From Bispira polyomma (lineage: Eukaryota), in the NCBI GenBank assembly GCA_965649765.1, contig OZ287751.1, positions 5,332,001-5,396,000 of the forward strand: 64,000 nucleotides of DNA, read 5' to 3'. This document shows, in pieces, positions 1-40,958 of this stretch; the stretch's first letter is position 1, and every line of letters starts with the position of its first letter. The position numbers were made by a program, and so were the translations under genes. Under the pieces are notes generated by a model. That model was not told the DNA's origin. It worked only from the letters and a program-made list of their open reading frames with translations, and searched no databases.

Positions 1-53
1 AAAACAGAACTGATAATCATGAGTCTATTTTTTTGCTGTTGTATTTTGTAAAG

Positions 54-120
54 GGTCTTGTGGTGTAGTGGTTATCACATCTGCTTTACACGCAGAAGGT
101 CATAAGTTCGATCAAGATCT
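54..120 (+). pseudogene. tRNA-Val(TAC) pseudogene with 6-bp T-arm deletion (same allele at 1479, 2904, 4329, 5754)
   Basis: GTTCGATCAAGATC in place of GTTCGATCCTCATCAAGACC removes the 3' strand of the T stem. Confidence 0.85.
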
Positions 121-874
121 TTAATACTTTTAATCTGACGAAACATTGCACATGTCATTGAACATTGTCTCATTAGAAATAATCAATTAACATTTCACAA
201 CATGACATGTTGTATTAGTATTCATGTGTTGGCTTTCAATGGCTACCTAAAATTAAATATAAGGCACACAAACTTTTGTTTTGCTTCTGACACTATTTCT
301 GCTGAATATGTGTGTTTCAAAGACAATCTATTGTTGATGTTTACTAGTTGAACCTGAATGCTGATAGAAGGAAAGTGTTGCCGAATCTTCAAGTAATGGA
401 CTAATTAAAAAATTTTCAGCAGCAATACTTCTACTTGTTTTCTCATTTTACCTCTTGAACCATGGCAAAAGTGGATAGCTGCATGAATTTTATACATGTG
501 TGGTGAGGTGAATTTTGATTTGAATCTTGTTAACTATTAAATATAACAGATAGTCAACATTACAAATGTTGAATACTTTGTTTGAATCTTGCATTTAAGA
601 TTCTTTAGTTCTAAAACACCTTTGGTAAATCATGTACAGTAAGGAATCTGATCTTTGCTAATCATCTGTAATGTGTTGCGTCTAAAGTCAGTCTTAAAAA
701 TGCAGACAACATTCATTTAAAGACTGTTCATGAATTTTGTTATGACAAAACCTGCACATTGTCCGACAGAAAGTGTGTATATATTATTGTAGCTTGATAT
801 GCGATTCATTTCTCTCAATTCTAGAACAAACAAAAGGAATTGAAATATAGTGTGTATAACATTAACTATCCTTC

Positions 875-947
875 AACCACCGGCGGGACTCGAACCCGCA
901 ATCCCCGGCTTAGGAGGCCGATGCCTTATCCATTGGGCCACGGTGGC
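875..947 (-). tRNA. trnR: tRNA-Arg(CCT), canonical
   Basis: GCCACCG TG GCCCAATGGATAAGGC A TCGGC CT-CCT-AA GCCGG GGATT GCGGG TTCGAGT CCCGC CGGTGGT T; full cloverleaf, A20, intact A/B boxes. Confidence 0.95.
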
Positions 948-1224
948 TTTTCAGTCTTTAGGTTTTGAATAAATTTTTAGAATTTAATGCTCTCTAACAT
1001 ATGGGCGCCTATGTCAATGACTGGAAGACAAGATCTGCTATGGAGTTCTATAAATTGCTCAGTATGGCAGTAATATTATTCTGTTGACTCTTTCTGCATC
1101 TTTTGCATATCAAACATATTATAAAAATTACTTTACTAATTTTGCAGGAAAAAGGCCTAACAATACGTTTGATGTAATGTTACATTTTGTAGGTTTACAA
1201 AAGTGTTTACGTGTTCCTCAAGCA

Positions 1225-1297
1225 GATCTTATGGTGTAGTGGTTATCACATCTGCTTAACACGCGGAAGGTCATGAGTTCGATCCTCATCAGGACCT
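1225..1297 (+). pseudogene. tRNA-Val(AAC), acceptor-stem mismatches (GATCTTA); similar alleles at 2650, 4075, 5500
   Basis: G2A (plus G7A here and at 2650) unpairs the acceptor stem. Confidence 0.7.
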
Positions 1298-2299
1298 CAA
1301 CATTTAACCAAGGGCATTACTTAGTAACAAGCAATTACTTTTTGTACACAAAAGAGATTGTTACAAAGGTGTTTGTTCTAATAATTAGAAATAATATTTT
1401 AATAGATTTCAATTCTCCCTCTTTAAAACAGAACTGATAATCATGAGTCTAATTTTTTTGCTGTTGTATTTTGTAAAGGGTCTTGTGGTGTAGTGGTTAT
1501 CACATCTGCTTTACACGCAGAAGGTCATAAGTTCGATCAAGATCTTTAATACTTTTAATCTGACGAAACATTGCACATGTCATTGAACATTGTCTCATTA
1601 GAAATAATCAATTAACATTTCACAACATGACATGTTGTATTAGTATTCATGTGTTGGCTTTCAATGGCTACCTAAAATTAAATATAAGGCACACAAACTT
1701 TTGTTTTGCTTCTGACACTATTTCTGCTGAATATGTGTGTTTCAAAGACAATCTATTGTTGATGTTTACTAGTTGAACCTGAATGCTGATAGAAGGAAAG
1801 TGTTGCCGAATCTTCAAGTAATGGACTGATTAAAAAATTTTCAGCAGCAATACTTCTACTTGTTTTCTCATTTTACTTCTTGAACCATGGCAAAAGTGGA
1901 TAGCTGCATGAATTTTATACATGTGTGGTGAGGTGAATTTTGATTTGAATCTTGTTAACTATTAAATATAACAGATAGTCAACATTACAAATGTTGAATA
2001 CTTTGTTTGAATCTTGCATTTAAGATTCTTTAGTTCTAAAACACCTTTGGTAAATCATGTACAGTAAGGAATCTGATCTTTGCTAATCATCTGTAATGTG
2101 TTGCGTCTAAAGTCAGTCTTAAAAATGCAGACAACATTCATTTAAAGACTGTTCATGAATTTTGTTATGACAAAACCTGCACATTGTCCGACAGAAAGTG
2201 TGTATATATTATTGTAGCTTGATATGCGATTCATTTCTCTCAATTCTAGAACAAACAAAAGGAATTGAAATATAGTGTGTATAACATTAACTATCATTC

Positions 2300-2372
2300 A
2301 ACCACCAGCGGGACTCGAACCCGCAATCCCCCGCTTAGGAGGCCGATGCCTTATCCATTGGGCCACGGTGGC
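2300..2372 (-). tRNA. trnR: tRNA-Arg(CCT), anticodon-stem mismatch
   Basis: B box intact; G29:G41 mismatch, G7-U66. Confidence 0.7.
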
Positions 2373-3724
2373 TTTTCAGTCTTTAGGTTTTGAATAAATT
2401 TTTAGAATTTAATGCTCTCTAACATATGGGCGCCTATGTCAATGACTGGAAGACAAGATCTGCTATGGAGTTCTATAAATTGCTCAGTATGGCAGTAATA
2501 TTATTCTGTTGACTCTTTCTGCATCTTTTGCATATCAAACATATTATAAAAATTACTTTACTAATTTTGCAGGAAAAAGGCCTAACAATACGTTTGATGT
2601 AATGTTACATTTTGTAGGTTTACAAAAGTGTTTACGTGTTCCTCAAGCAGATCTTATGGTGTAGTGGTTATCACATCTGCTTAACATGCAGAAGGTCATG
2701 AGTTCGATCCTCATCAGGACCTCAACATTTAACCAAGGGCATTACTTAGTAACAAGCAATTACTTTTTGTACACAAAAGAGATTGTTACAAAGGTGTTTG
2801 TTCTAATAATTAGAAATAATATTTTAATAGATTTCAATTCTCCCTCTTTAAAACAGAACTGATAATCATGAGTCTAATTTTTTTGCTGTTGTATTTTGTA
2901 AAGGGTCTTGTGGTGTAGTGGTTATCACATCTGCTTTACACGCAGAAGGTCATAAGTTCGATCAAGATCTTTAATACTTTTAATCTGACGAAACATTGCA
3001 CATGTCATTGAACATTGTCTCATTAGAAATAATCAATTAACATTTCACAACATGACATGTTGTATTAGTATTCATGTGTTGGCTTTCAATGGCTACCTAA
3101 AATTAAATATAAGGCACACAAACTTTTGTTTTGCTTCTGACACTATTTCTGCTGAATATGTGTGTTTCAAAGACAATCTATTGTTGATGTTTACTAGTTG
3201 AACCTGAATGCTGATAGAAGGAAAGTGTTGCCGAATCTTCAAGTAATGGACTGATTAAAAAATTTTCAGCAGCAATACTTCTACTTGTTTTCTCATTTTA
3301 CCTCTTGAACCATGGCAAAAGTGGATAGCTGCATGAATTTTATACATGTGTGGTGAGGTGAATTTTGATTTGAATCTTGTTAACTATTAAATATAACAGA
3401 TAGTCAACATTACAAATGTTGAATACTTTGTTTGAATCTTGCATTTAAGATTCTTTAGTTCTAAAACACCTTTGGTAAATCATGTACAGTAAGGAATCTG
3501 ATCTTTGCTAATCATCTGTAATGTGTTGCGTCTAAAGTCAGTCTTAAAAATGCAGACAACATTCATTTAAAGACTGTTCATGAATTTTGTTATGACAAAA
3601 CCTGCACATTGTCCGACAGAAAGTGTGTATATATTATTGTAGCTTGATATGCGATTCATTTCTCTCAATTCTAGAACAAACAAAAGGAATTGAAATATAG
3701 TGTGTATAACATTAACTACCCATC

Positions 3725-3797
3725 AACCACCGGCAGGACTCCAACCCGCAATCCCCGGCTTAGGAGGCCGATGCCTTATCCATTGGGCCACGGTGGC
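3725..3797 (-). pseudogene. tRNA-Arg(CCT), C56G B-box allele
   Basis: T loop TTGGAGT. Confidence 0.8.
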
Positions 3798-5149
3798 TTT
3801 TCAGTCTGCAGATTCTGAAAAAAATTTTAGAATTTAATGCTCTCTAACATATGGGAGCCTATGTCAATGACTGGAAGACAAGATCTGCTATGGAGTTCTA
3901 TAAATTGCTCAGTATGGCAGTAATATTATTCTGTTGACTCTTTCTGCATCTTTTGCATATCAAACATATTATAAAAATTACTTTACTAATTTTGCAGGAA
4001 AAAGGCCTAACAATACGTTTGATGTAATGTTACATTTTGTAGGTTTACAAAAGTGTTTACGTGTTCCTCAAGCAGATCTTGTGGTGTAGTGGTTATCACA
4101 TCTGCTTAACACGCAGAAGGTCATGAGTTCGATCCTCATCAGGACCTCAACATTTAACCAAGGGCATTACTTAGTAACAAGCAATTACTTTTTGTACACA
4201 AAAGAGATTGTTACAAAGGTGTTTGTTCTAATAATTAGAAATAATATTTTAATAGATTTCAATTCTCCCTCTTTAAAACAGAACTGATAATCATGAGTCT
4301 AATTTTTTTGCTGTTGTATTTTGTAAAGGGTCTTGTGGTGTAGTGGTTATCACATCTGCTTTACACGCAGAAGGTCATAAGTTCGATCAAGATCTTTAAT
4401 ACTTTTAATCTGACGAAACATTGCACATGTCATTGAACATTGTCTCATTAGAAATAATCAATTAACATTTCACAACATGACATGTTGTATTAGTATTCAT
4501 GTGTTGGCTTTCAATGGCTACCTAAAATTAAATATAAGGCACACAAACTTTTGTTTTGCTTCTGACACTATTTCTGCTGAATATGTGTGTTTCAAAGACA
4601 ATCTATTGTTGATGTTTACTAGTTGAACCTGAATGCTGATAGAAGGAAAGTGTTGCCGAATCTTCAAGTAATGGACTGATTAAAAAATTTTCAGCAGCAA
4701 TACTTCTACTTGTTTTCTCATTTTACCTCTTGAACCATGGCAAAAGTGGATAGCTGCATGAATTTTATACATGTGTGGTGAGGTGAATTTTGATTTGAAT
4801 CTTGTTAACTATTAAATATAACAGATAGTCAACATTACAAATGTTGAATACTTTGTTTGAATCTTGCATTTAAGATTCTTTAGTTCTAAAACACCTTTGG
4901 TAAATCATGTACAGTAAGGAATCTGATCTTTGCTAATCATCTGTAATGTGTTGCGTCTAAAGTCAGTCTTAAAAATGCAGACAACATTCATTTAAAGACT
5001 GTTCATGAATTTTGTTATGACAAAACCTGCACATTGTCCGACAGAAAGTGTGTATATATTATTGTAGCTTGATATGCGATTCATTTCTCTCAATTCTAGA
5101 ACAAACAAAAGGAATTGAAATATAGTGTGTATAACATTAACTACCCATC

Positions 5150-5222
5150 AACCACCGGCAGGACTCCAACCCGCAATCCCCGGCTTAGGAGGCCGATGCC
5201 TTATCCATTGGGCCACGGTGGC
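5150..5222 (-). pseudogene. tRNA-Arg(CCT), C56G
   Basis: T loop TTGGAGT. Confidence 0.8.
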
Positions 5223-6574
5223 TTTTCAGTCTGCAGATTCTGAAAAAAATTTTAGAATTTAATGCTCTCTAACATATGGGAGCCTATGTCAATGACTGGA
5301 AGACAAGATCTGCTATGGAGTTCTATAAATTGCTCAGTATGGCAGTAATATTATTCTGTTGACTCTTTCTGCATCTTTTGCATATCAAACATATTATAAA
5401 AATTACTTTACTAATTTTGCAGGAAAAAGGCCTAACAATACGTTTGATGTAATGTTACATTTTGTAGGTTTACAAAAGTGTTTACGTGTTCCTCAAGCAG
5501 ATCTTGTGGTGTAGTGGTTATCACATCTGCTTAACACGCAGAAGGTCATGAGTTCGATCCTCATCAGGACCTCAACATTTAACCAAGGGCATTACTTAGT
5601 AACAAGCAATTACTTTTTGTACACAAAAGAGATTGTTACAAAGGTGTTTGTTCTAATAATTAGAAATAATATTTTAATAGATTTCAATTCTCCCTCTTTA
5701 AAACAGAACTGATAATCATGAGTCTAATTTTTTTGCTGTTGTATTTTGTAAAGGGTCTTGTGGTGTAGTGGTTATCACATCTGCTTTACACGCAGAAGGT
5801 CATAAGTTCGATCAAGATCTTTAATACTTTTAATCTGACGAAACATTGCACATGTCATTGAACATTGTCTCATTAGAAATAATCAATTAACATTTCACAA
5901 CATGACATGTTGTATTAGTATTCATGTGTTGGCTTTCAATGGCTACCTAAAATTAAATATAAGGCACACAAACTTTTGTTTTGCTTCTGACACTATTTCT
6001 GCTGAATATGTGTGTTTCAAAGACAATCTATTGTTGATGTTTACTAGTTGAACCTGAATGCTGATAGAAGGAAAGTGTTGCCGAATCTTCAAGTAATGGA
6101 CTGATTAAAAAATTTTCAGCAGCAATACTTCTACTTGTTTTCTCATTTTACCTCTTGAACCATGGCAAAAGTGGATAGCTGCATGAATTTTATACATGTG
6201 TGGTGAGGTGAATTTTGATTTGAATCTTGTTAACTATTAAATATAACAGATAGTCAACATTACAAATGTTGAATACTTTGTTTGAATCTTGCATTTAAGA
6301 TTCTTTAGTTCTAAAACACCTTTGGTAAATCATGTACAGTAAGGAATCTGATCTTTGCTAATCATCTGTAATGTGTTGCGTCTAAAGTCAGTCTTAAAAA
6401 TGCAGACAACATTCATTTAAAGACTGTTCATGAATTTTGTTATGACAAAACCTGCACATTGTCCGACAGAAAGTGTGTATATATTATTGTAGCTTGATAT
6501 GCGATTCATTTCTCTCAATTCTAGAACAAACAAAAGGAATTGAAATATAGTGTGTATAACATTAACTACCCATC

Positions 6575-6647
6575 AACCACCGGCAGGACTCCAACCCGCA
6601 ATCCCCGGCTTAGGAGGCCGATGCCTTATCCATTGGGCCACGGTGGC
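6575..6647 (-). pseudogene. tRNA-Arg(CCT), C56G
   Basis: T loop TTGGAGT. Confidence 0.8.
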
Positions 6648-6924
6648 TTTTCAGTCTGCAGATTCTGAAAAAATTTTTAGAATTTAATGCTTTCTAACAT
6701 ATGGGAGCCTATGTCAATGACTGGAAGACAAGATCTGCTATGGAGTTCTATAAATTGCTCAGTATGGCAGTAATATTATTCTGTTGCCTCTTTCTTCATC
6801 TTTTGCATATCAAACATATTATAAAAATTACTTTACTAATTTTGCAGGAAAAAGGCCTAACAATACGTTTGATGTAATGTTACATTTTGTAGGTTTACAA
6901 AAGTGTTTACGTGTTCCTCAAGCA

Positions 6925-6997
6925 GGTGTTGTGGTGTAGTGGTTATCACATCTGCTTAACACGCAGAAGGTCATGAGTTCGATCATCATCAGGACAT
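6925..6997 (+). pseudogene. tRNA-Val(AAC) GGTGTTG/CAGGACA allele (also 9118, 10803, 14423, 18301, 19732, 23356, 25042)
   Basis: G1:A72 and G4:G69 mismatches, C61A in the B box. Confidence 0.75.
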
Positions 6998-7178
6998 CAA
7001 CATTTAACCAAGGGCATTGCTTAGTAACAAGCAATTACTTTTTGTACACAAAAGAGATTGTTACAAAGGTGTTTGTTCTGATAATTAGAAATAATATTTT
7101 AATAGATTTCAATTCTCCCTCTTTAAAACAGAACTGATAATCATGAGTCTGATTTTTTTGCTGTTGTATTTAGTAAAG

Positions 7179-7251
7179 GGTCTTGTGGTGTAGTGGTTAT
7201 CACATCTGCTTAACACGCAGAAGGTCATGAGTTCGATCCTCATCAGGACCT
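7179..7251 (+). tRNA. trnV: tRNA-Val(AAC), intact
   Basis: GGTCTTG TG GTGTAGTGGTTATCAC A TCTGC TT-AAC-AC GCAGA AGGTC ATGAG TTCGATC CTCAT CAGGACC T. Confidence 0.88.
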
Positions 7252-7940
7252 CAACATTTAACGAAGGGCATTGCTTAGTAACAAGCAATTTCTTTTTGTA
7301 CACAAAAGAGATTGTTACAAAGGTGTTTGTTCTAATAATTAGAAATAATATTTTAATAGATTTCAATTCTCTCCCTTTAAAACAGAACTGATAATCATGA
7401 GTCTGATTTTTTTGCTGTTGTATTTTGTAAATGGTCTTGTGGTGTAGTGGTTATCACATCTGCTTAACACGCAGAAGGTCATGAGTTCGATCATCATCAG
7501 GACATCAACATTTAACCAAGGGCATTGCTTAGTAACAAGCAATTACTTTTTGTACACAAAAGAGATTGTTACAAAGGTGTTTGTTCTGATAATTAGAAAT
7601 AATATTTTAATAGATTTCAATTCTCCCTCTTTAAAACAGAACTGATAATCATGAGTCTGATTTTTTTGCTGTTGTATTTAGTAAAGGGTCTTGTGGTGTA
7701 GTGGTTATCACATCTGCTTAACACGCAGAAGATCATGAGTTCGATCCTCATCAGGACCTCAACATTTAACCAAGGGCATTGCTTAGTAACAAGCAATTTC
7801 TTTTTGTACACAAAAGAGATTGTTACAAAGTTGTTTGTTCTAATAATTAGAAATAATATTTTAATAGATTTCAATTCTCTCCCTTTAAAACAGAACTGAT
7901 AATCATGAGTCTGATTTTTTTGCTGTTGTATTTTGTAAAT

Positions 7941-8013
7941 GGTCTTGTGGTGTAGTGGTTATCACATCTGCTTTACACGCAGAAGGTCATGAGTTCGATC
8001 CTCATCAAGACCT
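7941..8013 (+). tRNA. trnV: tRNA-Val(TAC), intact
   Basis: Same body with TT-TAC-AC loop; acceptor stem GGTCTTG/CAAGACC fully paired. Confidence 0.9.
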
Positions 8014-8767
8014 TTAATACTTCTAATCTGACGAAACATTGCACATGTCATTGAAAATTGTCTCATTAGAAATAATCAATTAACATTTCACAACATGACA
8101 TGTTGTATTAGTATTCATGTGTTGGCTTTCAATGGCTACCTAAAATTAAATATAAGGCACACAAACTTTTGTTTTGCTTCTGACACTATTTCTGCTGAAT
8201 ATGTGTGTTTCAAAGACAATCTATTGTTGATGTTTACTAGTTGAACCTGAATGCTGATAGAAGGAAAGTGTTGCCGAATCTTCAAGTAATGGACTGATTA
8301 AAAAATTTTCAGCAGCAATACTTCTACTTGTTTTCTCATTTTACCTCTTGAACCATGGCAAAAGTGGATAGCTGCATGAATTTTATACATGTGTGGTGAG
8401 GTGAATTTTGATTTGAATCTTGTTAACTATTAAATATAACAGATAGTCAACATTACAAATGTTGAATACTTTGTTTGAATCTTGCATTTAAGATTCTTTA
8501 GTTCTAAAACACCTTTGGTAAATCATGTACAGTAAGGAATCTGATCTTTGCTAATCATCTGTAATGTGTTGCGTCTAAAGTCAGTCTTAAAAATGCAGAC
8601 AACATTCATTTAAAGACTGTTCATGAATTTTGTTATGACAAAACCTGCACATTGTCCGACAGAAAGTGTGTATATATTATTGTAGCTTGATATGCGATTC
8701 ATTTCTCTCAATTCTAGAACAAACAAAAGGAATTGAAATATAGTGTGTATAACATTAACTACCCATC

Positions 8768-8840
8768 AACCACCGGCAGGACTCCAACCCGCAATCCCCG
8801 GCTTAGGAGGCCGATGCCTTATCCATTGGGCCACGGTGGC
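8768..8840 (-). pseudogene. tRNA-Arg(CCT), C56G
   Basis: T loop TTGGAGT. Confidence 0.8.
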
Positions 8841-9371: not shown

Positions 9372-9444
9372 GGTCTTGTGGTGTAGTGGTTATCACATCT
9401 GCTTAACACGCAGAAGGTCATGAGTTCGATCCTCATCAAGACCT
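9372..9444 (+). tRNA. trnV: tRNA-Val(AAC), intact
   Basis: Full cloverleaf, CAAGACC 3' strand. Confidence 0.88.
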
Positions 9445-13249: not shown

Positions 13250-13318
13250 GGTCTTGTGGTGTAGTGGTTATCACATCTGCTTTACACGCAGAAGGTCTCA
13301 CGATCCTCATCAAGACCT
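13250..13318 (+). pseudogene. tRNA-Val(TAC) with disrupted T arm
   Basis: AGGTCTCACGATCC replaces AGGTCATGAGTTCGATCC (net -4 bp, B box lost). Confidence 0.8.
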
Positions 13319-16084: not shown

Positions 16085-16869
16085 TTTTCAGTCTTTAGGT
16101 TCTGAATAAATTTTTAGAATTTAATGCTCTCTAACATATGGGAGCCTATGTCAATGACTGGAAGACAAGATCTGCTATGGAGTTCTATAAATTGCTCAGT
16201 ATGGCAGTAATATTATTCTGTTGACTCTTTCTGCATCTTTTGCATATCAAACATATTATAAAAATTACTTTACTAATTTTGCAGGAAAAAGGCCTAACAA
16301 TACGTTTGATGTAATGTTACATTTTGTAGGTTTACAAAAGTGTTTACGTGTTCCTCAAGCAGGTCTTGTGGTGTAGTGGTTATCACATCTGCTTAACCCG
16401 CAGAAGGTCATGAGTTCGATCCTCATCAAGACCTCAACATTTAACCAAGGGCATTGCTTAGTAACAAGCAATTACTTTTTGTACACAAAAGAGATTGTTA
16501 CAAAGGTGTTTGTTCTGATAATTAGAAATAATATTTTAATAGATTTCAATTCTCCCTCTTTAAAACAGAACTGATAATCATGAGTCTGATTTTTTTGCTG
16601 TTGTATTTAGTAAAGGGTCTTGTGGTGTAGTGGTTATCACATCCGCTTTACAAGCAGAAGGTCATGAGTTCGATCCTCATCAGGACCTCAACATTTAACC
16701 AAGGGCATTGCTTAGTAACAAGCAATTAATTTTTGTACACAAAAGAGATTGTTACAAAGGTGTTTGTTCTGATAATTAGAAATAATATTTTAATAGATTT
16801 CAATTCTCCCTCTTTAAAACAGAACTGATAATCATGAGTCTGATTTTTTTGCTGTTGTATTTTGTAAAG

Positions 16870-23078: not shown

Positions 23079-23863
23079 TTTTCAGTCTGCAGATTCTGAA
23101 AATTTTTTTAGAATTTAATGCTCTCTAACATATGGGAGCCTATGTCAATGACTGGAAGACAAGATCTGCTATGGAGTTCTATAAATTGCTCAGTATGGCA
23201 GTAATATTATTCTGTTGCCTCTTTCTTCATCTTTTGCATATCAAACATATTATAAAAATTACTTTACTAATTTTGCAGGAAAAAGGCCTAACAATACGTT
23301 TGATGTAATGTTACATTTTGTAGGTTTACAAAAGTGTTTACGTGTTCCTCAAGCAGGTGTTGTGGTGTAGTGGTTATCACATCTGCTTAACACGCAGAAG
23401 GTCATGAGTTCGATCATCATCAGGACATCAACATTTAACCAAGGGCATTGCTTAGTAACAAGCAATTACTTTTTGTACACAAAAGAGATTGTTACAAAGG
23501 TGTTTGTTCTGATAATTAGAAATAATATTTTAATAGATTTCAATTCTCCCTCTTTAAAACAGAACTGATAATCATGAGTCTGATTTTTTTGCTGTTGTAT
23601 TTAGTGAAGGGTCTTGTGGTGTAGTGGTTATCACATCCGCTTTACAAGCAGAAGGTCATGAGTTCGATCCTCATCAGGACCTCAACATTTAACCAAGGGC
23701 ATTGCTTAGTAACAAGCAATTTCTTTTTGTACACAAAAGAGATTGTTACAAAGGTGTTTGTTCTAATAATTAGAAATAATATTTTAATAGATTTCAATTC
23801 TCTCCCTTTAAAACAGAACTGATAATCATGAGTCTGATTTTTTTGCTGTTGTATTTTGTAAAT

Positions 23864-25622: not shown

Positions 25623-26376
25623 TTAATACTTTTAATCTGACGAAACATTGCACATGTCATTGAACATTGTCTCATTAGAAATAATCAATTAACATTTCAC
25701 AACATGACATGTTGTATTAGTATTCATGTGTTGGCTTTCAATGGCTACCTAAAATTAAATATAAGGCACACAAACTTTTGTTTTGCTTCTGACACTATTT
25801 CTGCTGAATATGTGTGTTTCAAAGACAATCTATTGTTGATGTTTACTAGTTGAACCTGAATGCTGATAGAAGGAAAGTGTTGCCGAATCTTCAAGTAATG
25901 GACTGATAAAAAAATTTTCAGCAGCAATACTTCTACTTGTTTTCTCATTTTACCTCTTGAACCATGGCAAAAGTGGATAGCTGCATGAATTTTATACATG
26001 TGTGGTGAGGTGAATTTTGATTTGAATCTTGTTAACTATTAAATATAACAGATAGTCAACATTACAAATGTTGAATACTTTGTTTGAATCTTGCATTTAA
26101 GATTCTTTAGTTCTAAAACACCTTTGGTAAATCATGTACAGTAAGGAATCTGATCTTTGCTAATCATCTGTAATGTGTTGCGTCTAAAGTCAGTCTTAAA
26201 AATGCAGACAACATTCATTTAAAGACTGTTCATGAATTTTGTTATGACAAAACCTGCACATTGTCCGACAGAAAGTGTGTATATATTATTGTAGCTTGAT
26301 ATGCGATTCATTTCTCTCAATTCTAGAACAAACAAAAGGAATTGAAATATAGTGTGTATAACATTAACTATCCTTC

Positions 26377-26449
26377 AACCACCGGCGGGACTCAAACCCG
26401 CAATCCCCGGCTTAGGAGGCCGATGCCTTATCCATTGGGCCACAGTGGC
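26377..26449 (-). pseudogene. tRNA-Arg(CCT), C56T
   Basis: T loop TTTGAGT. Confidence 0.75.
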
Positions 26450-26980
26450 TTTTCAGTCTTTAGGTTCTGAATAAATTTTTAGAATTTAATGCTCTCTAAC
26501 ATATGGGAGCCTATGTCAATGACTGGAAGACAAGATCTGCTATGGAGTTCTATAAATTGCTCAGTATGGCAGTAATATTATTCTGTTGACTCTTTCTGCA
26601 TCTTTTGCATATCAAACATATTATAAAAATGACTTTACTAATTTTGCAGGAAAAAGGCCTAACAATACGTTTGATGTAATGTTACATTTTGTAGGTTTAC
26701 AAAAGTGTTTACGTGTTCCTCAAGCAGGTGTTGTGGTGTAGTGGTTATCACATCTGCTTAACCCGCAGAAGGTCATGAGTTCGATCCTCATCAAGACCTC
26801 AACATTTAACCAAGGGCATTGCTTAGTAACAAGCAATTACTTTTTGTACACAAAAGAGATTGTTACAAAGGTGTTTGTTCTGATAATTAGAAATAATATT
26901 TTAATAGATTTCAATTCTCCCTCTTTAAAACAGAACTGATAATCATGAGTCTGATTTTTTTGCTGTTGTATTTTGTAAAG

Positions 26981-27053
26981 GGTCTTGTGGTGTAGTGGTT
27001 ATCACATCTGCTTAACACGCAGAAGGTCATGAGTTCGATCCTCATCAGGACCT
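26981..27053 (+). tRNA. trnV: tRNA-Val(AAC), intact
   Basis: Full cloverleaf. Confidence 0.88.
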
Positions 27054-27488
27054 CAACATTTAACCAAGGGCATTGCTTAGTAACAAGCAATTACTTTTTG
27101 TACACAAAAGAGATTGTTACAAAGGTGTTTGTTCTAATAATTAGAAATAATATTTTAATAGATTTCAATTCTCCCCCTTTAAAACAGAACTGATAATCAT
27201 GAGTCTGATTTTTTTGCCATTGTATTTTGTAAAGGGTCTTGTGGTGTAGTGGTTATCACATCTGCTTAACCTGCAGAAGGTCATGAGTTCGATCCTCATC
27301 AGGACCTCAACATTTAACCAAGGGCATTGCTTAGTAACAAGCAATTAATTTTTGTACACAAAAGAGATTGTTACAAAGGTGTTTGTTCTGATAATTAGAA
27401 ATAATATTTTAATAGATTTCAATTCTCCCTCTTTAAAACAGAACTGATAATCATGAGTCTGATTTTTTTGCTGTTGTATTTTGTAAAG

Positions 27489-27561
27489 GGTCTTGTGGTG
27501 TAGTGGTTATCACATCTGCTTAACACGCAGAAGGTCATGAGTTCGATCCTCATCAGGACCT
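27489..27561 (+). tRNA. trnV: tRNA-Val(AAC), intact
   Basis: Full cloverleaf. Confidence 0.88.
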
Positions 27562-27742
27562 CAACATTTAACCAAGGGCATTGCTTAGTAACAAGCAATT
27601 ACTTTTTGTACACAAAAGAGATTGTTACAAAGGTGTTTGTTCTGATAATTAGAAATAATATTTTAATAGATTTCAATTCTCCCTCTTTAAAACAGAACTG
27701 ATAATCATGAGTCTGATTTTTTTGCTGTTGTATTTTGTAAAG

Positions 27743-27815
27743 GGTCTTGTGGTGTAGTGGTTATCACATCTGCTTTACACGCAGAAGGTCATGAGTTCGA
27801 TCCTCATCAAGACCT
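27743..27815 (+). tRNA. trnV: tRNA-Val(TAC), intact
   Basis: Full cloverleaf. Confidence 0.9.
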
Positions 27816-28569
27816 TTAATACTTTTAATCTGACGAAACATTGCACATGTCATTGAACATTGTCTCATTAGAAATAATCAATTAACATTTCACAACATGA
27901 CATGTTGTATTAGTATTCATGTGTTGGCTTTCAATGGCTACCTAAAATTAAATATAAGGCACACAAACTTTTGTTTTGCTTCTGACACTATTTCTGCTGA
28001 ATATGTGTGTTTCAAAGACAATCTATTGTTGATGTTTACTAGTTGAACCTGAATGCTGATAGAAGGAAAGTGTTGCCGAATCTTCAAGTAATGTACTGAT
28101 AAAAAAATTTTCAGCAGCAATACTTCTACTTGTTTTCTCATTTTACCTCTTGAACCATGGCAAAAGTGGATAGCTGCATGAATTTTATACATGTGTGGTG
28201 AGGTGAATTTTGATTTGAATCTTGTTAACTATTAAATATAACAGATAGTCAACATTACAAATGTTGAATACTTTGTTTGAATCTTGCATTTAAGATTCTT
28301 TAGTTCTAAAACACCTTTGGTAAATCATGTACAGTAAGGAATCTGATCTTTGCTAATCATCTGTAATGTGTTGCGTCTAAAGTCAGTCTTAAAAATGCAG
28401 ACAACATTCATTTAAAGACTGTTCATGAATTTTGTTATGACAAAACCTGCACATTGTCCGACAGAAAGTGTGTATATATTATTGTAGCTTGATATGCGAT
28501 TCATTTCTCTCAATTCTAGAACAAACAAAAGGAATTGAAATATAGTGTGTATAACATTAACTATCCTTC

Positions 28570-28642
28570 AACCACCGGCGGGACTCGAACCCGCAATCCC
28601 CGGCTTAGGAGGCCGATGCCTTATCCATTGGGCCACGGTGGC
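28570..28642 (-). tRNA. trnR: tRNA-Arg(CCT), canonical
   Basis: Identical to 875..947. Confidence 0.95.
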
Positions 28643-29173
28643 TTTTCAGTCTTTAGGTTCTGAATAAATTTTTAGAATTTAATGCTCTCTAACATATGGG
28701 AGCCTATGTCAATGACTGGAAGACAAGATCTGCTATGGAGTTCTATAAATTGCTCAGTATGGCAGTAATATTATTCTGTTGACTCTTTCTGCATCTTTTG
28801 CATATCAAACATATTATAAAAATGACTTTACTAATTTTGCAGGAAAAAGGCCTAACAATACGTTTGATGTAATGTTACATTTTGTAGGTTTACAAAAGTG
28901 TTTACGTGTTCCTCAAGCAGGTCTTGTGGTGTAGTGGTTATCACATCTGCTTAACCCGCAGAAGGTCATGAGTTCGATCCTCATCAAGACCTCAACATTT
29001 AACCAAGGGCATTGCTTAGTAACAAGCAATTACTTTTTGTACACAAAAGAGATTGTTACAAAGGTGTTTGTTCTGATAATTAGAAATAATATTTTAATAG
29101 ATTTCAATTCTCCCTCTTTAAAACAGAACTGATAATCATGAGTCTGATTTTTTTGCTGTTGTATTTTGTAAAG

Positions 29174-29246
29174 GGTCTTGTGGTGTAGTGGTTATCACAT
29201 CTGCTTAACACGCAGAAGGTCATGAGTTCGATCCTCATCAGGACCT
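29174..29246 (+). tRNA. trnV: tRNA-Val(AAC), intact
   Basis: Full cloverleaf. Confidence 0.88.
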
Positions 29247-29427
29247 CAACATTTAACCAAGGGCATTGCTTAGTAACAAGCAATTACTTTTTGTACACAA
29301 AAGAGATTGTTACAAAGGTGTTTGTTCTGATAATTAGAAATAATATTTTAATAGATTTCAATTCTCCCTCTTTAAAACAGAACTGATAATCATGAGTCTA
29401 ATTTTTTTGCTGTTGTATTTTGTAAAG

Positions 29428-29500
29428 GGTCTTGTGGTGTAGTGGTTATCACATCTGCTTTACACGCAGAAGGTCATGAGTTCGATCCTCATCAAGACCT
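29428..29500 (+). tRNA. trnV: tRNA-Val(TAC), intact
   Basis: Full cloverleaf. Confidence 0.9.
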
Positions 29501-30254
29501 TTAATACTTTTAATCTGACGAAACATTGCACATGTCATTGAACATTGTCTCATTAGAAATAATCAATTAACATTTCACAACATGTCATGTTGTATTAGTA
29601 TTCATGTGTTGGCTTTCAATGGCTACCTAAAATTAAATATAAGGCACACAAACTTTTGTTTTGCTTCTGACACTATTTCTGCTGAATATGTGTGTTTCAA
29701 AGACAATCTATTGTTGATGTTTACTAGTTGAACCTGATTGCTGATAGAAGGAAAGTGTTGCCGAATCTTCAAGTAATGGACTGATTAAAAAATTTTCAGC
29801 AGCAATACTTCTACTTGTTTTCTCATTTTACCTCTTGAACCATGGCAAAAGTGGATAGCTGCATGAATTTTATACATGTGTGGTGAGGTGAATTTTGATT
29901 TGAATCTTGTTAACTATTAAATATAACAGATAGTCAACATTACAAATGTTGAATACTTTGTTTGAATCTTGCATTTAAGATTCTTTAGTTCTAAAACACC
30001 TTTGGTAAATCATGTACAGTAAGGAATCTGATCTTTGCTAATCATCTGTAATGTGTTGCGTCTAAAGTCAGTCTTAAAAATGCAGACAACATTCATTTAA
30101 AGACTGTTCATGAATTTTGTTATGACAAAACCTGCACATTGTCCGACAGAAAGTGTGTATATATTATTGTAGCTTGATATGCGATTCATTTCTCTCAATT
30201 CTAGAACAAACAAAAGGAATTGAAATATAGTGTGTATAACATTAACTATCCTTC

Positions 30255-30327
30255 AACCACCGGCGGGACTCGAACCCGCAATCCCCGGCTTAGGAGGCCG
30301 ATGCCTTATCCATTGGGCCACGGTGGC
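30255..30327 (-). tRNA. trnR: tRNA-Arg(CCT), canonical
   Basis: Identical to 875..947. Confidence 0.95.
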
Positions 30328-31939
30328 TTTTCAGTCTTTAGGTTCTGAATAAATTTTTAGAATTTAATGCTCTCTAACATATGGGAGCCTATGTCAATGA
30401 CTGGAAGACAAGATCTGCTATGGAGTTCTATAAATTGCTCAGTATGGCAGTAATATTATTCTGTTGACTCTTTCTGCATCTTTTGCATATCAAACATATT
30501 ATAAAAATTACTTTACTAATTTTGCAGGAAAAAGGCCTAACAATACGTTTGATGTAATGTTACATTTTGTAGGTTTACAAAAGTGTTTACGTGTTCCTCA
30601 AGCAGGTCTTGTGGTGTAGTGGTTATCACATCTGCTTAACCCGCAGAAGGTCATGAGTTCGATCCTCATCAAGACCTCAACATTTAACCAAGGGCATTGC
30701 TTAGTAACAAGCAATTACTTTTTGTACACAAAAGAGATTGTTACAAAGGTGTTTGTTCTGATAATTAGAAATAATATTTTAATAGATTTCAATTCTCCCT
30801 CTTTAAAACAGAACTGATAATCATGAGTCTGATTTTTTTGCTGTTGTATTTTATAAAGGGTCTTGTGGTGTAGTGGTTATCACATCTGCTTAACACGCAA
30901 AAGGTCATGAGTTCGATCCTCATCAGGACTCCAACATTTAACCAAGGGCATTGCTTAGTAACAAGCAATTACTTTTTGTACACAAAAGAGATTGTTACAA
31001 AGGTGTTTGTTCTAATAATTAGAAATAATATTTTAATAGATTTCAATTCTCTCCCTTTAAAACAGAACTGATAATCATGAGTCTGATTTTTTTGCTGTTG
31101 TATTTTGTAAAGGGTCTTGTGGTGTAGTGGTTATCACATCTGCTTTACACGCAGAAGGTCATGAGTTCAATCCTCATCAAGATCTTTAATACTTTTAATC
31201 TGACGAAACATTGCACATGTCATTGAACGTTGTCTCATTAGAAATAATCAATTAACATTTCACAACATGACATGTTGTATTAGTATTCATGTGTTGGCTT
31301 TCAATGGCTACCTAAAATTAAATATAAGGGACACAAACTTTTGTTTTGCTTCTGACACTATTTCTGCTGAATATGTGTGTTTCAAAGACAATCTATTGTT
31401 GATGTTTACTAGTTGAACCTGAATGCTGATAGAAGGAAAGTGTTGCCGAATCTTCAAGTAATGGACTGATTAAAAAATTTTCAGCAGCAATACTTCTACT
31501 TGTTTTCTCATTTTACCTCTTGAACCATGGCAAAAGTGGATAGCTGCATGAATTTTATACATGTGTGGTGAGGTGAATTTTGATTTGAATCTTGTTAACT
31601 ATTAAATATAACAGATAGTCAACATTACAAATGTTGAATATTTTGTTTGAATCTTGCATTTAAGATTCTTTAGTTCTAAAACACCTTTGGTAAATCATGT
31701 ACAGTAAGGAATCTGAACTTTACTAATCATCTGTAATGTGTTGCGTCTAAAGTCAGTCTTAAAAATGCAGACAACATTCATTTAAAGACTGTTCATGAAT
31801 TTTGTTATGACAAAACCTGCACATTGTCCGACAGAAAGTGTGTATATATTATTGTAGCTTGATATGCGATTCATTTCTCTCAATTCTAGAACAAACAAAA
31901 GGAATTGAAATATAGTGTGTATAACATTAACTATCCTTC

Positions 31940-32012
31940 AACCACCGGTGGGACTCCAACCCCCAATCCCCGGCTTAGGAGGCCGATGCCTTATCCATTG
32001 GGCCACAGTGGC
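31940..32012 (-). pseudogene. tRNA-Arg(CCT), C56G plus T-stem mismatch
   Basis: GGGGG TTGGAGT CCCAC. Confidence 0.8.
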
Positions 32013-33370
32013 CTTTCAGTCTTTAGGTTCTGAATAAATTTTTAGAATTTAATGCTCTCTAACATATGGGCGCCTATGTCAATGACTGGAAGACAAGATC
32101 TGCTATGGAGTTCTACAAATTGCTCAGTATGGCAGTAATATTATTCTGTTGACTCTTTCTGCATCTTTTACATATCAAACATATTATAAAAATTACTTTA
32201 CTAATTTTGCAGGAAAAAGGCCTAACAATACGTTTGATGTAATGTTACATTTTGTAGGTTTACAAAAGTGTTTACATGTTCCTCAAGCAGGTGTTGTGGT
32301 GTAGTGGTTATCACATCTGCTTAACCGGCAGAAGGTCATGAGTTCGATCCTCATCAGGACCTCAACATTTAACCAAGGGCATTGCTTAGTAACAAGCAAT
32401 TTCTTTTTGTACACAACAGAAATTGTTACAAAGGTGTTTGTTCTAATAATTAGAAATAATATTTTAATAGATTTCAATTCTCTCCCTTTAAAACAGAACT
32501 GATAATCATGAGTCTGATTTTTTTGCTGTTGTATTTTGTTAAGGGTCTTGTGGTGTAGTGGTTATCACATCTGCTTTACACGCAGCAGGTCATGAGTTCA
32601 ATCCTCATCAAGATCTTTAATACTTTTAATCTGACGAAACATTGCACATGTCATTGAACATTGTCTCATTAGAAATAATCAATTAACATTTCACAACATG
32701 ACATGTTGTATTAGTATTCATGTGTTGGCTTTCAATGGCTACCTAAAATTAAATATAAGGGACACAAACTTTTGTTTTGCTTCTGACACTATTTCTGCTG
32801 AATATGTGTGTTTCAAAGACAATCTATTGTTGATGTTTACTAGTTGAACCTGAATGCTGATAGAAGGAAAGTGTTGCCGAATCTTCAAGTAATGGACTGA
32901 TTAAAAAATTTTCAGCAGCAATACTTCTACTTGTTTTCTCATTTTACCTCTTGAACCATGGCAAAAGTGGATAGCTGCATGAATTTTATACATGTGTGGT
33001 GAGGTGAATTTTGATTTGAATCTTGTTAACTATTAAATATAACAGATAGTCAACATTACAAATGTTGAATACTTTGTTTGAATCTTGCATTTAAGATTCT
33101 TTAGTTCTAAAACACCTTTGGTAAATCATGTACAGTAAGGAATCTGAACTTTGCTAATCATCTGTAATGTGTTGCGTCTAAAGTCAGTCTTAAAAATGCA
33201 GACAACATTCATTTAAAGACTGTTCATGAATTTTGTTATGACAAAACCTGCACATTGTCCGACAGAAAGTGTGTATATATTATTGTAGCTTGATATGCGA
33301 TTCATTTCTCTCAATTCTAGAACAAACAAAAGGAATTGAAATATAGTGTGTATAACATTAACTACCCATC

Positions 33371-33443
33371 AACCACCGGCAGGACTCGAACCCACAATCC
33401 CCGGCTTAGGAGGCCGATGCCTTATCCATTGGGCCACGGTGGC
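33371..33443 (-). tRNA. trnR: tRNA-Arg(CCT), B box intact, two G-U pairs in T stem
   Basis: GTGGG TTCGAGT CCTGC. Confidence 0.8.
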
Positions 33444-33716
33444 TTTTCAGTCTGTAGATTCTGAAAAAATTTTTAGAATTTAATGCTCTCTAACATATGG
33501 GAGCCTATGTCAATGACTGGAAGACAAGATCTGCTATGGAGTTCTATAAATTGCTCAGTATGGCAGTAATATTATTCTGTTGACTCTTCATCTTTTGCAT
33601 ATCAAACATATTATAAAAATTACTTTACTAATTTTGCAGGAAAAAGGCCAAACAATACGTTTGATGTAATGTTACATTTTGTAGGTTTACAAAAGTGTTC
33701 ATGCGTTCCTCAAGCA

Positions 33717-33789
33717 GGTCTTGTGGTGTAGTGGTTATCACATCTGCTTAACACGCAGAAGGTCATGAGTTCGATCCTCATCAGGACCT
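33717..33789 (+). tRNA. trnV: tRNA-Val(AAC), intact, proximal T4 terminator
   Basis: Full cloverleaf followed by CAACTTTT. Confidence 0.9.
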
Positions 33790-35051
33790 CAACTTTTAAC
33801 CAAGCGCATTGCTTAATAACAAGCAATTACATTTTGTACACAAAAGAGATTGTTACAAAGGTGTTTGTTTTAATAATTAGAAATAATATTTTAATAGATT
33901 TCAATTCTCCCCCTTTAAAACAGAACTGATAATCATGAGTCTGATTTTTTTGCTCTTGTTCTTTGTGAAGGGTCTTGTGGTGTAGTGGTTATCACATCTG
34001 CTTAACACGCAGAAGGTCATGAGTTCAATCCTCATCAGGACCTCAACATTTAACCAAGGGCATTGCTTAGTAACAAGCAATTACTTTTTGTACACAACAG
34101 AAATTGTTACAAAGGTGTTTGTTCTAATAATTAGAAATAATATTTTAATAGATTTCAATTCTCTCCCTTTAAAACAGAACTGATAATCATGAGTCTGATT
34201 TTTTTGCTGTTGTATTTTGTTAAGGGTCTTGTGGTGTAGTGGTTATCACATCTGCTTTACACGCAGCAGGTCATGAGTTCAATCCTCATCAAGATCTTTA
34301 ATACTTTTAATCTGACGAAACATTGCACATGTCATTGAACATTGTCTCATTAGAAATAATCAATTAACATTTCACAACATGACATGTTGTATTAGTATTC
34401 ATGTGTTGGCTTTCAATGGCTACCTAAAATTAAATATAAGGGACACAAACTTTTGTTTTGCTTCTGACACTATTTCTGCTGAATATGTGTGTTTCAAAGA
34501 CAATCTATTGTTGATGTTTACTAGTTGAACCTGAATGCTGATAGAAGGAAAGTGTTGCCGAATCTTCAAGTAATGGACTGATTAAAAAATTTTCAGCAGC
34601 AATACTTCTACTTGTTTTCTCATTTTACCTCTTGAACCATGGCAAAAGTGGATAGCTGCATGAATTTTATACATGTGTGGTGAGGTGAATTTTGATTTGA
34701 ATCTTGTTAACTATTAAATATAACAGATAGTCAACATTACAAATGTTGAATACTTTGTTTGAATCTTGCATTTAAGATTCTTTAGTTCTAAAACACCTTT
34801 GGTAAATCATGTACAGTAAGGAATCTGAACTTTGCTAATCATCTGTAATGTGTTGCGTCTAAAGTCAGTCTTAAAAATGCAGACAACATTCATTTAAAGA
34901 CTGTTCATGAATTTTGTTATGACAAAACCTGCACATTGTCCGACAGAAAGTGTGTATATATTATTGTAGCTTGATATGCGATTCATTTCTCTCAATTCTA
35001 GAACAAACAAAAGGAATTGAAATATAGTGTGTATAACATTAACTACCCATC

Positions 35052-35124
35052 AACCACCGGCAGGACTCGAACCCGCAATCCCCGGCTTAGGAGGCCGATG
35101 CCTTATCCATTGGGCCACGGTGGC
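35052..35124 (-). tRNA. trnR: tRNA-Arg(CCT), B box intact
   Basis: GCGGG TTCGAGT CCTGC. Confidence 0.87.
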
Positions 35125-35397
35125 TTTTCAGTCTGTAGATTCTGAAAAAATTTTTAGAATTTAATGCTCTCTAACATATGGGAGCCTATGTCAATGACTG
35201 GAAGACAAGATCTGCTATGGAGTTCTATAAATTGCTCAGTATGGCAGTAATATTATTCTGTTGACTCTTCATCTTTTGCATATCAAACATATTATAAAAA
35301 TTACTTTACTAATTTTGCAGGAAAAAGGCCAAACAATACGTTTGATGTAATGTTACATTTTGTAGGTTTACAAAAGTGTTCATGCGTTCCTCAAGCA

Positions 35398-35470
35398 GGT
35401 CTTGTGGTGTAGTGGTTATCACATCTGCTTAACACGCAGAAGGTCATGAGTTCGATCCTCATCAGGACCT
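35398..35470 (+). tRNA. trnV: tRNA-Val(AAC), intact, proximal T4 terminator
   Basis: Full cloverleaf followed by CAACTTTT. Confidence 0.9.
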
Positions 35471-36478
35471 CAACTTTTAACCAAGCGCATTGCTTAATAA
35501 CAAGCAATTACATTTTGTACACAAAAGAGATTGTTACAAAGGTGTTTGTTTTAATAATTAGAAATAATATTTTAATAGATTTCAATTCTCCCCCTTTAAA
35601 ACAGAACTGATAATCATGAGTCTGATTTTTTTGCTCTTGTTCTTTGTGAAGGGTCTTGTGGTGTAGTGGTTATCACATCTGCTTTACACGCAGAAGGTCA
35701 TGAGTTCAATCCTCATCAAGATCTTTAATACTTTTAATCTGACGAAACATTGCACATGTCATTGAACATTGTCTCATTAGAAATAATCAATTAACATTTC
35801 ACAACATGACATGTTGTATTAGTATTCATGTGTTGGCTTTCAATGGCTACCTAAAATTAAATATAAGGGACACAAACTTTTGTTTTGCTTCTGACACTAT
35901 TTCTGCTGAATATGTGTGTTTCAAAGACAATCTATTGTTGATGTTTACTAGTTGAACCTGAATGCTGATAGAAGGAAAGTGTTGCCGAATCTTCAAGTAA
36001 TGGACTGATTAAAAAATTTTCAGCAGCAATACTTCTACTTGTTTTCTCATTTTACCTCTTGAACCATGGCAAAAGTGGATAGCTGCATGAATTTTATACA
36101 TGTGTGGTGAGGTGAATTTTGATTTGAATCTTGTTAACTATTAAATATAACAGATAGTCAACATTACAAATGTTGAATACTTTGTTTGAATCTTGCATTT
36201 AAGATTCTTTAGTTCTAAAACACCTTTGGTAAATCATGTACAGTAAGGAATCTGAACTTTGCTAATCATCTGTAATGTGTTGCGTCTAAAGTCAGTCTTA
36301 AAAATGCAGACAACATTCATTTAAAGACTGTTCATGAATTTTGTTATGACAAAACCTGCACATTGTCCGACAGAAAGTGTGTATATATTATTGTAGCTTG
36401 ATATGCGATTCATTTCTCTCAATTCTAGAACAAACAAAAGGAATTGAAATATAGTGTGTATAACATTAACTACCCATC

Positions 36479-36551
36479 AACCACCGGCAGGACTCGAACC
36501 CGCAATCCCCGGCTTAGGAGGCCGATGCCTTATCCATTGGGCCATGGTGGC
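36479..36551 (-). tRNA. trnR: tRNA-Arg(CCT), A7:C66 mismatch
   Basis: B box intact, 5' strand GCCACCA. Confidence 0.75.
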
Positions 36552-36824
36552 GTTTCAGTCTGTAGATTCTGAAAAAATTTTTAGAATTTAATGCTCTCTA
36601 ACATATGGGAGCCTATGTCAATGACTGGAAGACAAGATCTGCTATGGAGTTCTATAAATTGCTCAGTATGGCAGTAATATTATTCTGTTGACTCTTCATC
36701 TTTTGCATATCAAACATATTATAAAAATTACTTTACTAATTTTGCAGGAAAAAGGCCAAACAATACGTTTGATGTAATGTTACATTTTGTAGGTTTACAA
36801 AAGTGTTCATGTGTTCCTCAAGCA

Positions 36825-36897
36825 GGTCTTGTGGTGTAGTGGTTATCACATCTGCTTAACACGCAGAAGGTCATGAGTTCGATCCTCATCAGGACCT
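36825..36897 (+). tRNA. trnV: tRNA-Val(AAC), intact, proximal T4 terminator
   Basis: Full cloverleaf followed by CAACTTTT. Confidence 0.9.
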
Positions 36898-37078
36898 CAA
36901 CTTTTAACCAAGCGCATTGCTTAATAACAAGCAATTACATTTTGTACACAAAAGAGATTGTTACAAAGGTGTTTGTTTTAATAATTAGAAATAATATTTT
37001 AATAGATTTCAATTCTCCCCCTTTAAAACAGAACTGATAATCATGAGTCTGATTTTTTTGCTCTTGTTCTTTGTGAAG

Positions 37079-37151
37079 GGTCTTGTGGTGTAGTGGTTAT
37101 CACATCTGCTTTACACGCAGAAGGTCATGAGTTCGATCCTCATCAAGACCT
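37079..37151 (+). tRNA. trnV: tRNA-Val(TAC), intact; last gene of the array
   Basis: Full cloverleaf. Confidence 0.9.
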
Positions 37152-40935: not shown

Positions 40936-40958
40936 TGGTAAGGAAGGTTCCCAATGGA

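What the first reader, a model, noticed from the sequence alone, without database searches (positions are those of the whole stretch)
1..37151. Two-level tRNA-gene satellite in which the tRNA genes are the variable sub-repeat
Seen: a constant module (long spacer, Arg-CCT on minus, short spacer) alternates with 2-5 Val genes at an exact 254-bp period, giving the run pattern 2,2,2,2,5,3,2,5,4,4,2,3,4,3,3,5,3,3,2,3,2,2. Arg and Val are divergent across ~277 bp and convergent across ~755 bp. Known: tandem tRNA arrays exist (Entamoeba, Xenopus, human 1q23), and tRNA genes can act as TFIIIC-dependent insulators. Inference: this array can change Val(AAC) dosage independently of Arg and Val(TAC), or it may be a chromatin landmark of ~89 A/B-box sites about 26 kb upstream of a neuronal receptor gene.
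Basis: partly seen in the sequence, partly recalled or inferred. Interest (0 to 1): 0.8.

Follow-up and report, generated by a model that had tools for sequence, protein, structure and literature searches.

The report
Nested valine/arginine tRNA gene array
An invertebrate keeps about 120 valine and arginine tRNA genes in a 51-kb tandem array where the valine gene is itself repeated 2-5 times per unit; this looks like ordinary unequal recombination acting on a probably transcribed, partly decayed tRNA cluster rather than a dosage switch or an insulator, though the valine tRNA is an array-only variant that selection has kept foldable.

Summary
The array extends 14 kb left of the window (51 kb; 31 Arg, 90 Val). 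Chimeric Val genes show that run length changes by unequal exchange inside or between Val genes. AAC is copied most because the anticodon travels with the repeated spacer, and TAC was copied too. Only 36 of 89 genes pass a simple integrity test and 58 keep a canonical B box. Variation is 5-8 times higher in genes and immediate flanks than in the long spacer, as expected of Pol III-transcribed genes. Against an older sister cluster 1 Mb away, genes show 3 fixed differences in 219 sites versus 85 in 957 in spacers. The Val body differs from the dispersed Val(TAC) gene by four fully compensated base pairs and was found only in these two clusters. A second nested tRNA array lies on the same chromosome, and earlier scan notes report other tRNA arrays in this genome. 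Dosage tuning and insulation of the mGluR gene are unsupported and untested.

The parts
1..37151 (.). Right 37 kb of a 51-kb tandem tRNA gene array (units 1425-2193 bp = about 1177 bp + 254 bp x (n-1)); continues 13.9 kb left of the window
27816..28569 (.). Long spacer (754 bp), example; one per unit, least variable part (pi 0.003-0.005); T4 terminator of the terminal Val at about +8
28570..28642 (-). tRNA-Arg(CCT), example identical to the three dispersed genes; 22 copies in window, 9 with canonical B box, 7 fully intact, 4 identical to dispersed
28643..28919 (.). Short divergent spacer (277 bp), example; holds the 5' flanks of Arg and of the first Val, both mutation peaks
6925..6997 (+). First-position Val(AAC), example with broken pairs 1:72, 4:69, 53:61; only 3 of 22 first-position copies in the window are intact
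26981..27234 (+). 254-bp sub-repeat, example: intact array-type Val(AAC) (73 nt) plus 181-bp spacer; 11 of 20 internal AAC copies in the window are intact
27743..27815 (+). Terminal Val(TAC), example intact; 15 of 23 intact in the window
1479..1545 (+). Terminal Val(TAC) pseudogene with 6-bp T-arm deletion (same lesion at 54, 2904, 4329, 5754; a different deletion at 13250)
7433..7505 (+). Chimeric internal Val: 3' markers of a first-position copy (61A, 72A) without its 5' marker (4G), behind a sub-repeat spacer; exchange point inside the gene
16616..16688 (+). Chimeric internal Val(TAC): terminal-type anticodon with internal-type 3' end and spacer (second copy at 23610)
37152..37250 (.). Right edge: long spacer reduced to short pieces by deletions
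38205..39455 (.). Three patches 83-88% like the DNA flanking the end of the older cluster (C4:4.241 Mb); trace of the duplication that seeded this array
48891..49313 (+). Orphan remnant of the long spacer without tRNA genes, 73% like the young array and 79-84% like the older cluster

Best explanation
A Pol III tRNA gene cluster evolving as a nested tandem repeat by unequal exchange at two scales. An older unit (Arg on minus, Val-spacer-Val on plus) was duplicated in inverted orientation about 1 Mb along the chromosome and amplified to 31 units. Because Val occurs twice per unit, mispairing between Val genes adds or removes 254-bp blocks, giving runs of 2-5. AAC is the usual passenger because the anticodon half of the first/internal gene travels with the repeated spacer; two is a floor because going below it needs an exchange within only 73 bp. 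The genes are probably transcribed in the germ line, mutate several-fold faster than the spacer, and decay copy by copy, while selection on the array as a whole (or gene-limited conversion) keeps the consensus functional. Shown: anatomy, chimeras, sister cluster, mutation profile, long-term conservation. Inferred: exchange mechanism, direction of duplication, transcription, selection.
For: Chimeric Val genes and mosaic runs. Modules differing by 1-3 substitutions in 1093 bp carry different run lengths, e.g. 5/4/2 and 3/5. Older cluster already has runs of 1, 2 and 3, including the single-Val reciprocal product; its end flank matches window 38205-39455. Variable sites per base: long-spacer core 0.024, Arg 0.19 (8x, p=9e-8), CpG-free Arg flanks 0.175 (7x, p=3e-7), first Val 0.16; singletons alone 4-7x; 5' peaks at -10 to -18, matching PMC6130373 (7-10x, peak 12-15 nt upstream). 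C mutated more than G on the coding strand, 23:11 (p=0.015). Fixed old-versus-young differences: genes 3/219 (two at wobble position 34) versus spacer cores 85/957 (p=2e-5). Second nested array at C4:66.86-66.93 Mb.
Against: No RNA, ChIP or read evidence. Arg copies with dead B boxes carry as many rare flank/gene variants as intact ones (10 of 16 in 17 of 30 units, p=0.8), so the mutation peak is not tied to a copy's current B box; small sample, and conversion shuffles alleles. 10 of 16 Arg alleles are at CpG sites. With the strictest filter (non-CpG, rare, absent from old cluster) only pooled Arg flanks stay significant (p=0.02). Sites are not independent, so p values are optimistic. Gene-limited conversion could mimic selection for Arg, which has identical dispersed copies.
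Confidence: 0.68

Rival explanations
1. The array encodes a stage- or germline-specific ('oocyte-type') valine isodecoder family kept by selection, and run expansion is favoured because it regenerates intact Val(AAC) genes after the first-position copy decays.
For: Array Val differs from dispersed Val(TAC) at 9 positions, 8 forming four compensated pairs (5:68, 6:67, 49:65, 50:64); 0-1 in 60,000 simulations reach that. Body found only in the two chromosome-4 clusters. All anticodon variants stay valine (AAC, CAC, TAC). 16 of 19 intact AAC genes are internal; 13 of 15 two-gene units have none. Only about 10 dispersed Val and 3 dispersed Arg(CCT) genes found.
Against: No expression data. Compensation shows selection for folding, not stage specificity. 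The Arg gene is the ordinary one. Internal copies descend from few events. The variant folds less stably than the dispersed gene (-21 versus -28 kcal/mol) and its minimum-energy fold is not the cloverleaf.
Confidence: 0.17
2. A silent, decaying tRNA-derived satellite: once functional, now amplified neutrally; the excess variation in genes reflects CpG deamination and older coalescence.
For: 53 of 89 genes carry lesions, several at high frequency (C56G in 12 Arg copies, 6-bp deletion in 5 TAC copies); the T4 terminator next to non-terminal Val is lost in 56 of 59 copies; B-box test negative.
Against: CpG-free flanks and singletons show the same peak; spacer CpGs show no variants; consensus genes have barely moved since the split from the old cluster.
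Confidence: 0.1
3. The array is maintained as a TFIIIC chromatin boundary for the group II mGluR gene 26 kb away.
For: 58 canonical B boxes in the window; tRNA genes can be barriers (own knowledge); the human 1q23.3 tRNA repeat is implicated as a boundary (PMC4041453).
Against: B-box-destroying alleles spread in 18 of 31 Arg copies; the array is young relative to its flanks; tRNA arrays recur across the genome; the 1q23.3 case rests on a conserved CTCF site, with no equivalent shown here. An incidental boundary effect is not excluded.
Confidence: 0.04
4. The run pattern is an assembly artefact of a uniform repeat.
For: Raw reads were not checked; only the assembly was analysed.
Against: 0 of 28 adjacent sub-repeats identical, 45 of 59 distinct, 29 of 30 whole units distinct, with coherent shared haplotypes; the old cluster, with spacers about 9% diverged at consensus level, shows the same variation. 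Three public runs from two samples hold 50-55% of sampled words (one study, possibly the source).
Confidence: 0.02

Closest known systems
Xenopus borealis oocyte-type 5S DNA (Korn and Brown 1978, PMID 264240; citation seen, paper not held, content recalled from memory)
   Same: As recalled: Pol III genes in clusters of variable gene number with short internal spacers, separated by a long AT-rich spacer, i.e. the gene is the variable sub-repeat; a variant gene type distinct from the somatic one.
   Different: 5S rather than tRNA; oocyte specificity is demonstrated there and untested here; no second, oppositely oriented gene; no anticodon polarity.
Human 1q23.3 tRNA VNTR (PMC4041453)
   Same: Tandem tRNA units with copy number in the tens (9-43) and instability.
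   Different: 7.3-kb GC-rich unit with a conserved CTCF site; variation reported in unit number, not in nested gene runs; here 1.4-2.2-kb AT-rich units.
Entamoeba tRNA gene arrays (PMC2652664)
   Same: Tandem units with up to five tRNA genes; two-level variation inside units.
   Different: There the variable sub-repeats are short tandem repeats between genes and nearly all tRNA genes are arrayed; here the gene is the sub-repeat and dispersed canonical genes exist.
Transcription-associated mutagenesis at tRNA genes (PMC6130373; PMC13010820)
   Same: 7-10x excess of variation in genes and inner flanks, upstream peak, low long-term gene divergence.
   Different: Measured here among paralogues of one assembly, not among individuals; not lower in B-box-dead copies.
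Isoacceptor anticodon shifts in eukaryotic tRNA genes (PMC3923123, abstract only; PMC7919458)
   Same: One body carries AAC, CAC and TAC; two decayed Arg copies in the old cluster read CCA.
   Different: Here the shifts are tied to position in the run (terminal gene CAC in the old cluster, TAC in the young one).
Zebrafish chromosome 4 tRNA concentration (PMC11075544)
   Same: Large arrayed tRNA set alongside dispersed genes, hypothesised to be maternal.
   Different: Megabase scale and colocalised with maternal 5S/snRNA genes; maternal status is a hypothesis in that paper.

Membership tests
Tandem tRNA gene array under concerted/birth-and-death evolution | Head-to-tail units holding full-length tRNA genes | tested here: met
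   31 units, Rfam RF00005 48-68 bits
Tandem tRNA gene array under concerted/birth-and-death evolution | Units homogenised within the array, diverged from paralogous clusters | tested here: met
   Modules differ by 12 of 1093 bp on average; 78-89% identity to old cluster spacers
Tandem tRNA gene array under concerted/birth-and-death evolution | Mix of intact and pseudogenised copies | tested here: met
   36 of 89 intact in the window
Tandem tRNA gene array under concerted/birth-and-death evolution | Copy number varies between individuals | not testable with these tools
Actively transcribed tRNA locus (TAM signature) | Several-fold excess variation in genes and inner flanks with a peak 10-15 nt upstream | tested here: met
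Actively transcribed tRNA locus (TAM signature) | Excess depends on an intact promoter | tested here: inconclusive
   No drop in B-box-dead Arg copies, 16 events, p=0.8
Actively transcribed tRNA locus (TAM signature) | Pol III occupancy or transcripts | not testable with these tools
   No RNA run listed
Oocyte-type (dual-system) Pol III gene family | Arrayed variant distinct from dispersed type with compensated structure | tested here: met
   Met for Val (four compensated pairs), not for Arg
Oocyte-type (dual-system) Pol III gene family | Expression restricted to oocytes or early embryos | not testable with these tools
   No data
tRNA-derived SINE | Dispersed copies with tRNA head, unrelated body and tail | tested here: not met
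   Confined to two clusters; full 73-nt genes; spacers not dispersed
tDNA insulator | Intact B boxes maintained | tested here: inconclusive
   58 of 89 canonical; loss alleles common
tDNA insulator | TFIIIC binding and boundary activity | not testable with these tools
   Needs ChIP, Hi-C, reporter assay

The most novel reading that the evidence does not exclude
The array supplies a germline- or stage-specific valine isodecoder family, structurally re-tuned by four compensated pairs and serving all three valine anticodons, and the nested exchange is a selected repair and tuning route that rebuilds intact Val(AAC) genes from a damaged first copy and a terminal Val(TAC) copy.
Probability: 0.12. 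Interest if true: 0.7.

Novelty: new variant of a known kind. Interest (0 to 1): 0.36.

Why it matters
As it stands: a clean natural record of tRNA gene turnover, with exchange points mapped inside 73-bp genes, and mutation input and long-term constraint readable from one assembly. It also holds most Val(AAC), Val(TAC) and Arg(CCT) gene copies found in this genome, so annotation by raw count would badly overstate functional copy number. If the variant Val is oocyte-specific, it would extend dual translation-machinery systems to an invertebrate, with a distinguishing sequence that makes the test easy.

Tried and rejected
After that, no letters of that stretch, in any copy, went to a search tool: later searches used an Rfam accession, words, or tRNA positions 49-72 beside it. 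A scan of metagenome contigs for the array-type T-arm found nothing. Korn and Brown 1978 is not held; no paper on annelid nuclear tRNA arrays or on U73 in tRNA-Val turned up. U73 as a defect of the array genes was rejected because dispersed genes share it. SINE origin was rejected. Direct import of Arg haplotypes from the old cluster was rejected because both haplotypes mix ancestral and derived alleles. The 181-bp spacer is unrelated to the other spacers or to the spacer of the dispersed AAC pair. The large protein searches were not used. Taxon (probably an annelid) comes only from earlier unverified notes.

Full report
Observation. The window is C4:5,332,001-5,396,000 of a 1.035-Gb animal assembly. 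It holds 22 Arg(CCT) genes on minus and 67 Val genes on plus. The array begins 13.9 kb left of the window; in full it is 51 kb with 31 Arg and 90 Val (56 AAC, 33 TAC, 1 CAC), in runs of 2 (15 units), 3 (7), 4 (6) and 5 (3). Every run ends in TAC. The gene 25.8 kb to the right is a group II metabotropic glutamate receptor.

Integrity. Only 36 of the 89 genes in the window keep all stems, a canonical B box and a normal anticodon loop; 58 keep the B box. Twelve Arg copies carry C56G, which from my own knowledge is the classic mutation that abolishes TFIIIC binding; one carries C56T. Six terminal TAC copies have T-arm deletions. First-position AAC copies are mostly damaged (3 of 30 intact over the whole array), so 16 of the 19 intact AAC genes are internal, and 13 of 15 two-gene units have no intact AAC gene. 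The T4 next to non-terminal Val survives in 3 of 59 copies; the others would end at about +42.

How run length changes. Marker strings of Val genes and spacers show mosaics. The gene at 7433 has the 3' markers of a first-position copy but not its 5' marker, which places an exchange inside the gene and explains a five-gene run as two three-gene runs joined. The genes at 16616 and 23610 have the terminal anticodon with an internal 3' end. Modules that differ by 1-3 substitutions in 1093 bp carry runs of 5, 4 and 2, or 3 and 5, so run length turns over about as often as a module gains a point mutation (inference; module-run reassortment contributes). A two-gene unit offers only 73 bp of homology for shrinking further, a three-gene unit 327 bp, which accounts for a floor at two without selection (inference).

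Origin. A related cluster lies at C4:4.24-4.29 Mb in the opposite orientation, 78-89% identical in spacers. It has runs of one, two and three Val genes, mostly CAC in the terminal position, and two decayed Arg copies reading CCA. DNA right of the young array (38205-39455) matches the end flank of that cluster at 83-88%, and an orphan spacer remnant sits at 48891-49313. An inverted segmental duplication followed by amplification fits best.

Mutation and selection. Variable sites per base are 0.024 in the long-spacer core, against 0.19 in Arg, 0.175 in its CpG-free 40-bp flanks and 0.16 in the first Val. Singletons alone are 4-7 times higher, upstream variants cluster at -10 to -18, and Arg 3' variants all lie within 9 nt of the gene. 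This matches the published signature of transcription-associated mutagenesis (PMC6130373). Against the old cluster's consensus the genes have 3 fixed differences in 219 sites, two at the wobble base, versus 85 in 957 in spacer cores. High polymorphism with low divergence (33 and 3 in genes, 16 and 59 in the long spacer) is what high mutation input plus purifying selection gives. Caveats: Arg copies with dead B boxes are not less mutated (p=0.8, 16 events), many Arg variants are at CpG, sites are not independent, and gene-limited conversion could contribute.

The Val variant. Dispersed Val genes come in two bodies: four with the TAC-type body (2 TAC, 2 AAC) and six with another (2 AAC, 4 CAC); three dispersed Arg(CCT) genes are identical to five array copies. 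These counts are lower bounds. The array Val is related to the TAC-type body but differs at nine positions, eight of them in four compensated pairs, two of these changes being transversions; simulation gave 0 and 1 in 60,000. It was found only in the two chromosome-4 clusters. Which lineage changed is not known without an outgroup. This is the least ordinary feature and the basis of the oocyte-type rival.

Context and comparison. Nesting is not unique in this genome: at C4:66.86-66.93 Mb a Val(CAC)+Gly(TCC) pair recurs at 359 bp, one to three times, within a unit of about 957 bp. Regularly spaced tRNA hits also occur on C3 and C11 (structure not examined). Earlier scan notes report Lys and Asp arrays, one with the same mutation reading (unverified, not independent). 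Known parallels are the human 1q23.3 repeat (PMC4041453), Entamoeba arrays (PMC2652664) and, from memory, Xenopus borealis oocyte 5S DNA, where the gene itself varies in number per cluster. I found no paper describing a tRNA gene as the nested variable unit, but the search library is incomplete.

Verdict. A selected stage-specific Val family is possible (0.17), a dead satellite less so (0.10); insulator (0.04) and artefact (0.02) are unlikely. New variant of a known kind; interest 0.36.

Noticed in passing
L018-L020, L024-L026, L029 (dispersed Val genes); L021-L023 (Arg-CCT): All 10 dispersed tRNA-Val genes of two body types, and nearly all arrayed ones, have U at discriminator position 73; PMC9976931 describes A73 as a conserved valine identity element. 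The Arg(CCT) genes also have U73. Possibly a lineage-level change in ValRS recognition; no outgroup checked.
   Followed up: partly
C4:66.86-66.93 Mb (L012-L017, L030): Second nested tRNA array: Val(CAC) and Gly(TCC) convergent pair as a 350-359-bp sub-repeat in a 957-bp unit; its Val also differs from the dispersed gene by a compensated T-stem pair; single copies read CTC and CCC.
   Followed up: partly
C3:9.93-9.96 Mb, C3:12.38-12.43 Mb, C11:11.52-11.54 Mb: Further regularly spaced tRNA hits; the C3:12.4 Mb set has mixed short (about 400 bp) and long spacings and may also be nested. Could not be fetched.
   Followed up: no
window 62921-64000: First large coding exon of a group II mGluR (best matches mGluR3/2, E about 1e-124); an N stretch at 62241-62372 lies upstream and was left as is.
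   Followed up: partly
window 42207-45534: LINE with endonuclease-like part interrupted by a stop and an open 749-aa reverse transcriptase frame (PF00078).
   Followed up: partly
window 40004-41219 and 45838-46537: Minus-strand fragments resembling a tyrosine-recombinase (DIRS-like) retroelement, split by the LINE; judged by eye, no Pfam hit for the 266-aa frame.
   Followed up: no
window 48891-49313: Orphan long-spacer remnant ending at the Arg boundary, closer to the old cluster than to the young array.
   Followed up: yes
L020:3268-3586 (C4:80.248 Mb): Two dispersed Val(AAC) genes 246 bp apart with the TAC-type body, an independent AAC/TAC shift; their spacer is unrelated to the array's.
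   Followed up: partly
run X4 (organism B): A second organism holds 5% of the sampled words of window 26300-32200; could be a relative sharing part of the array.
   Followed up: no
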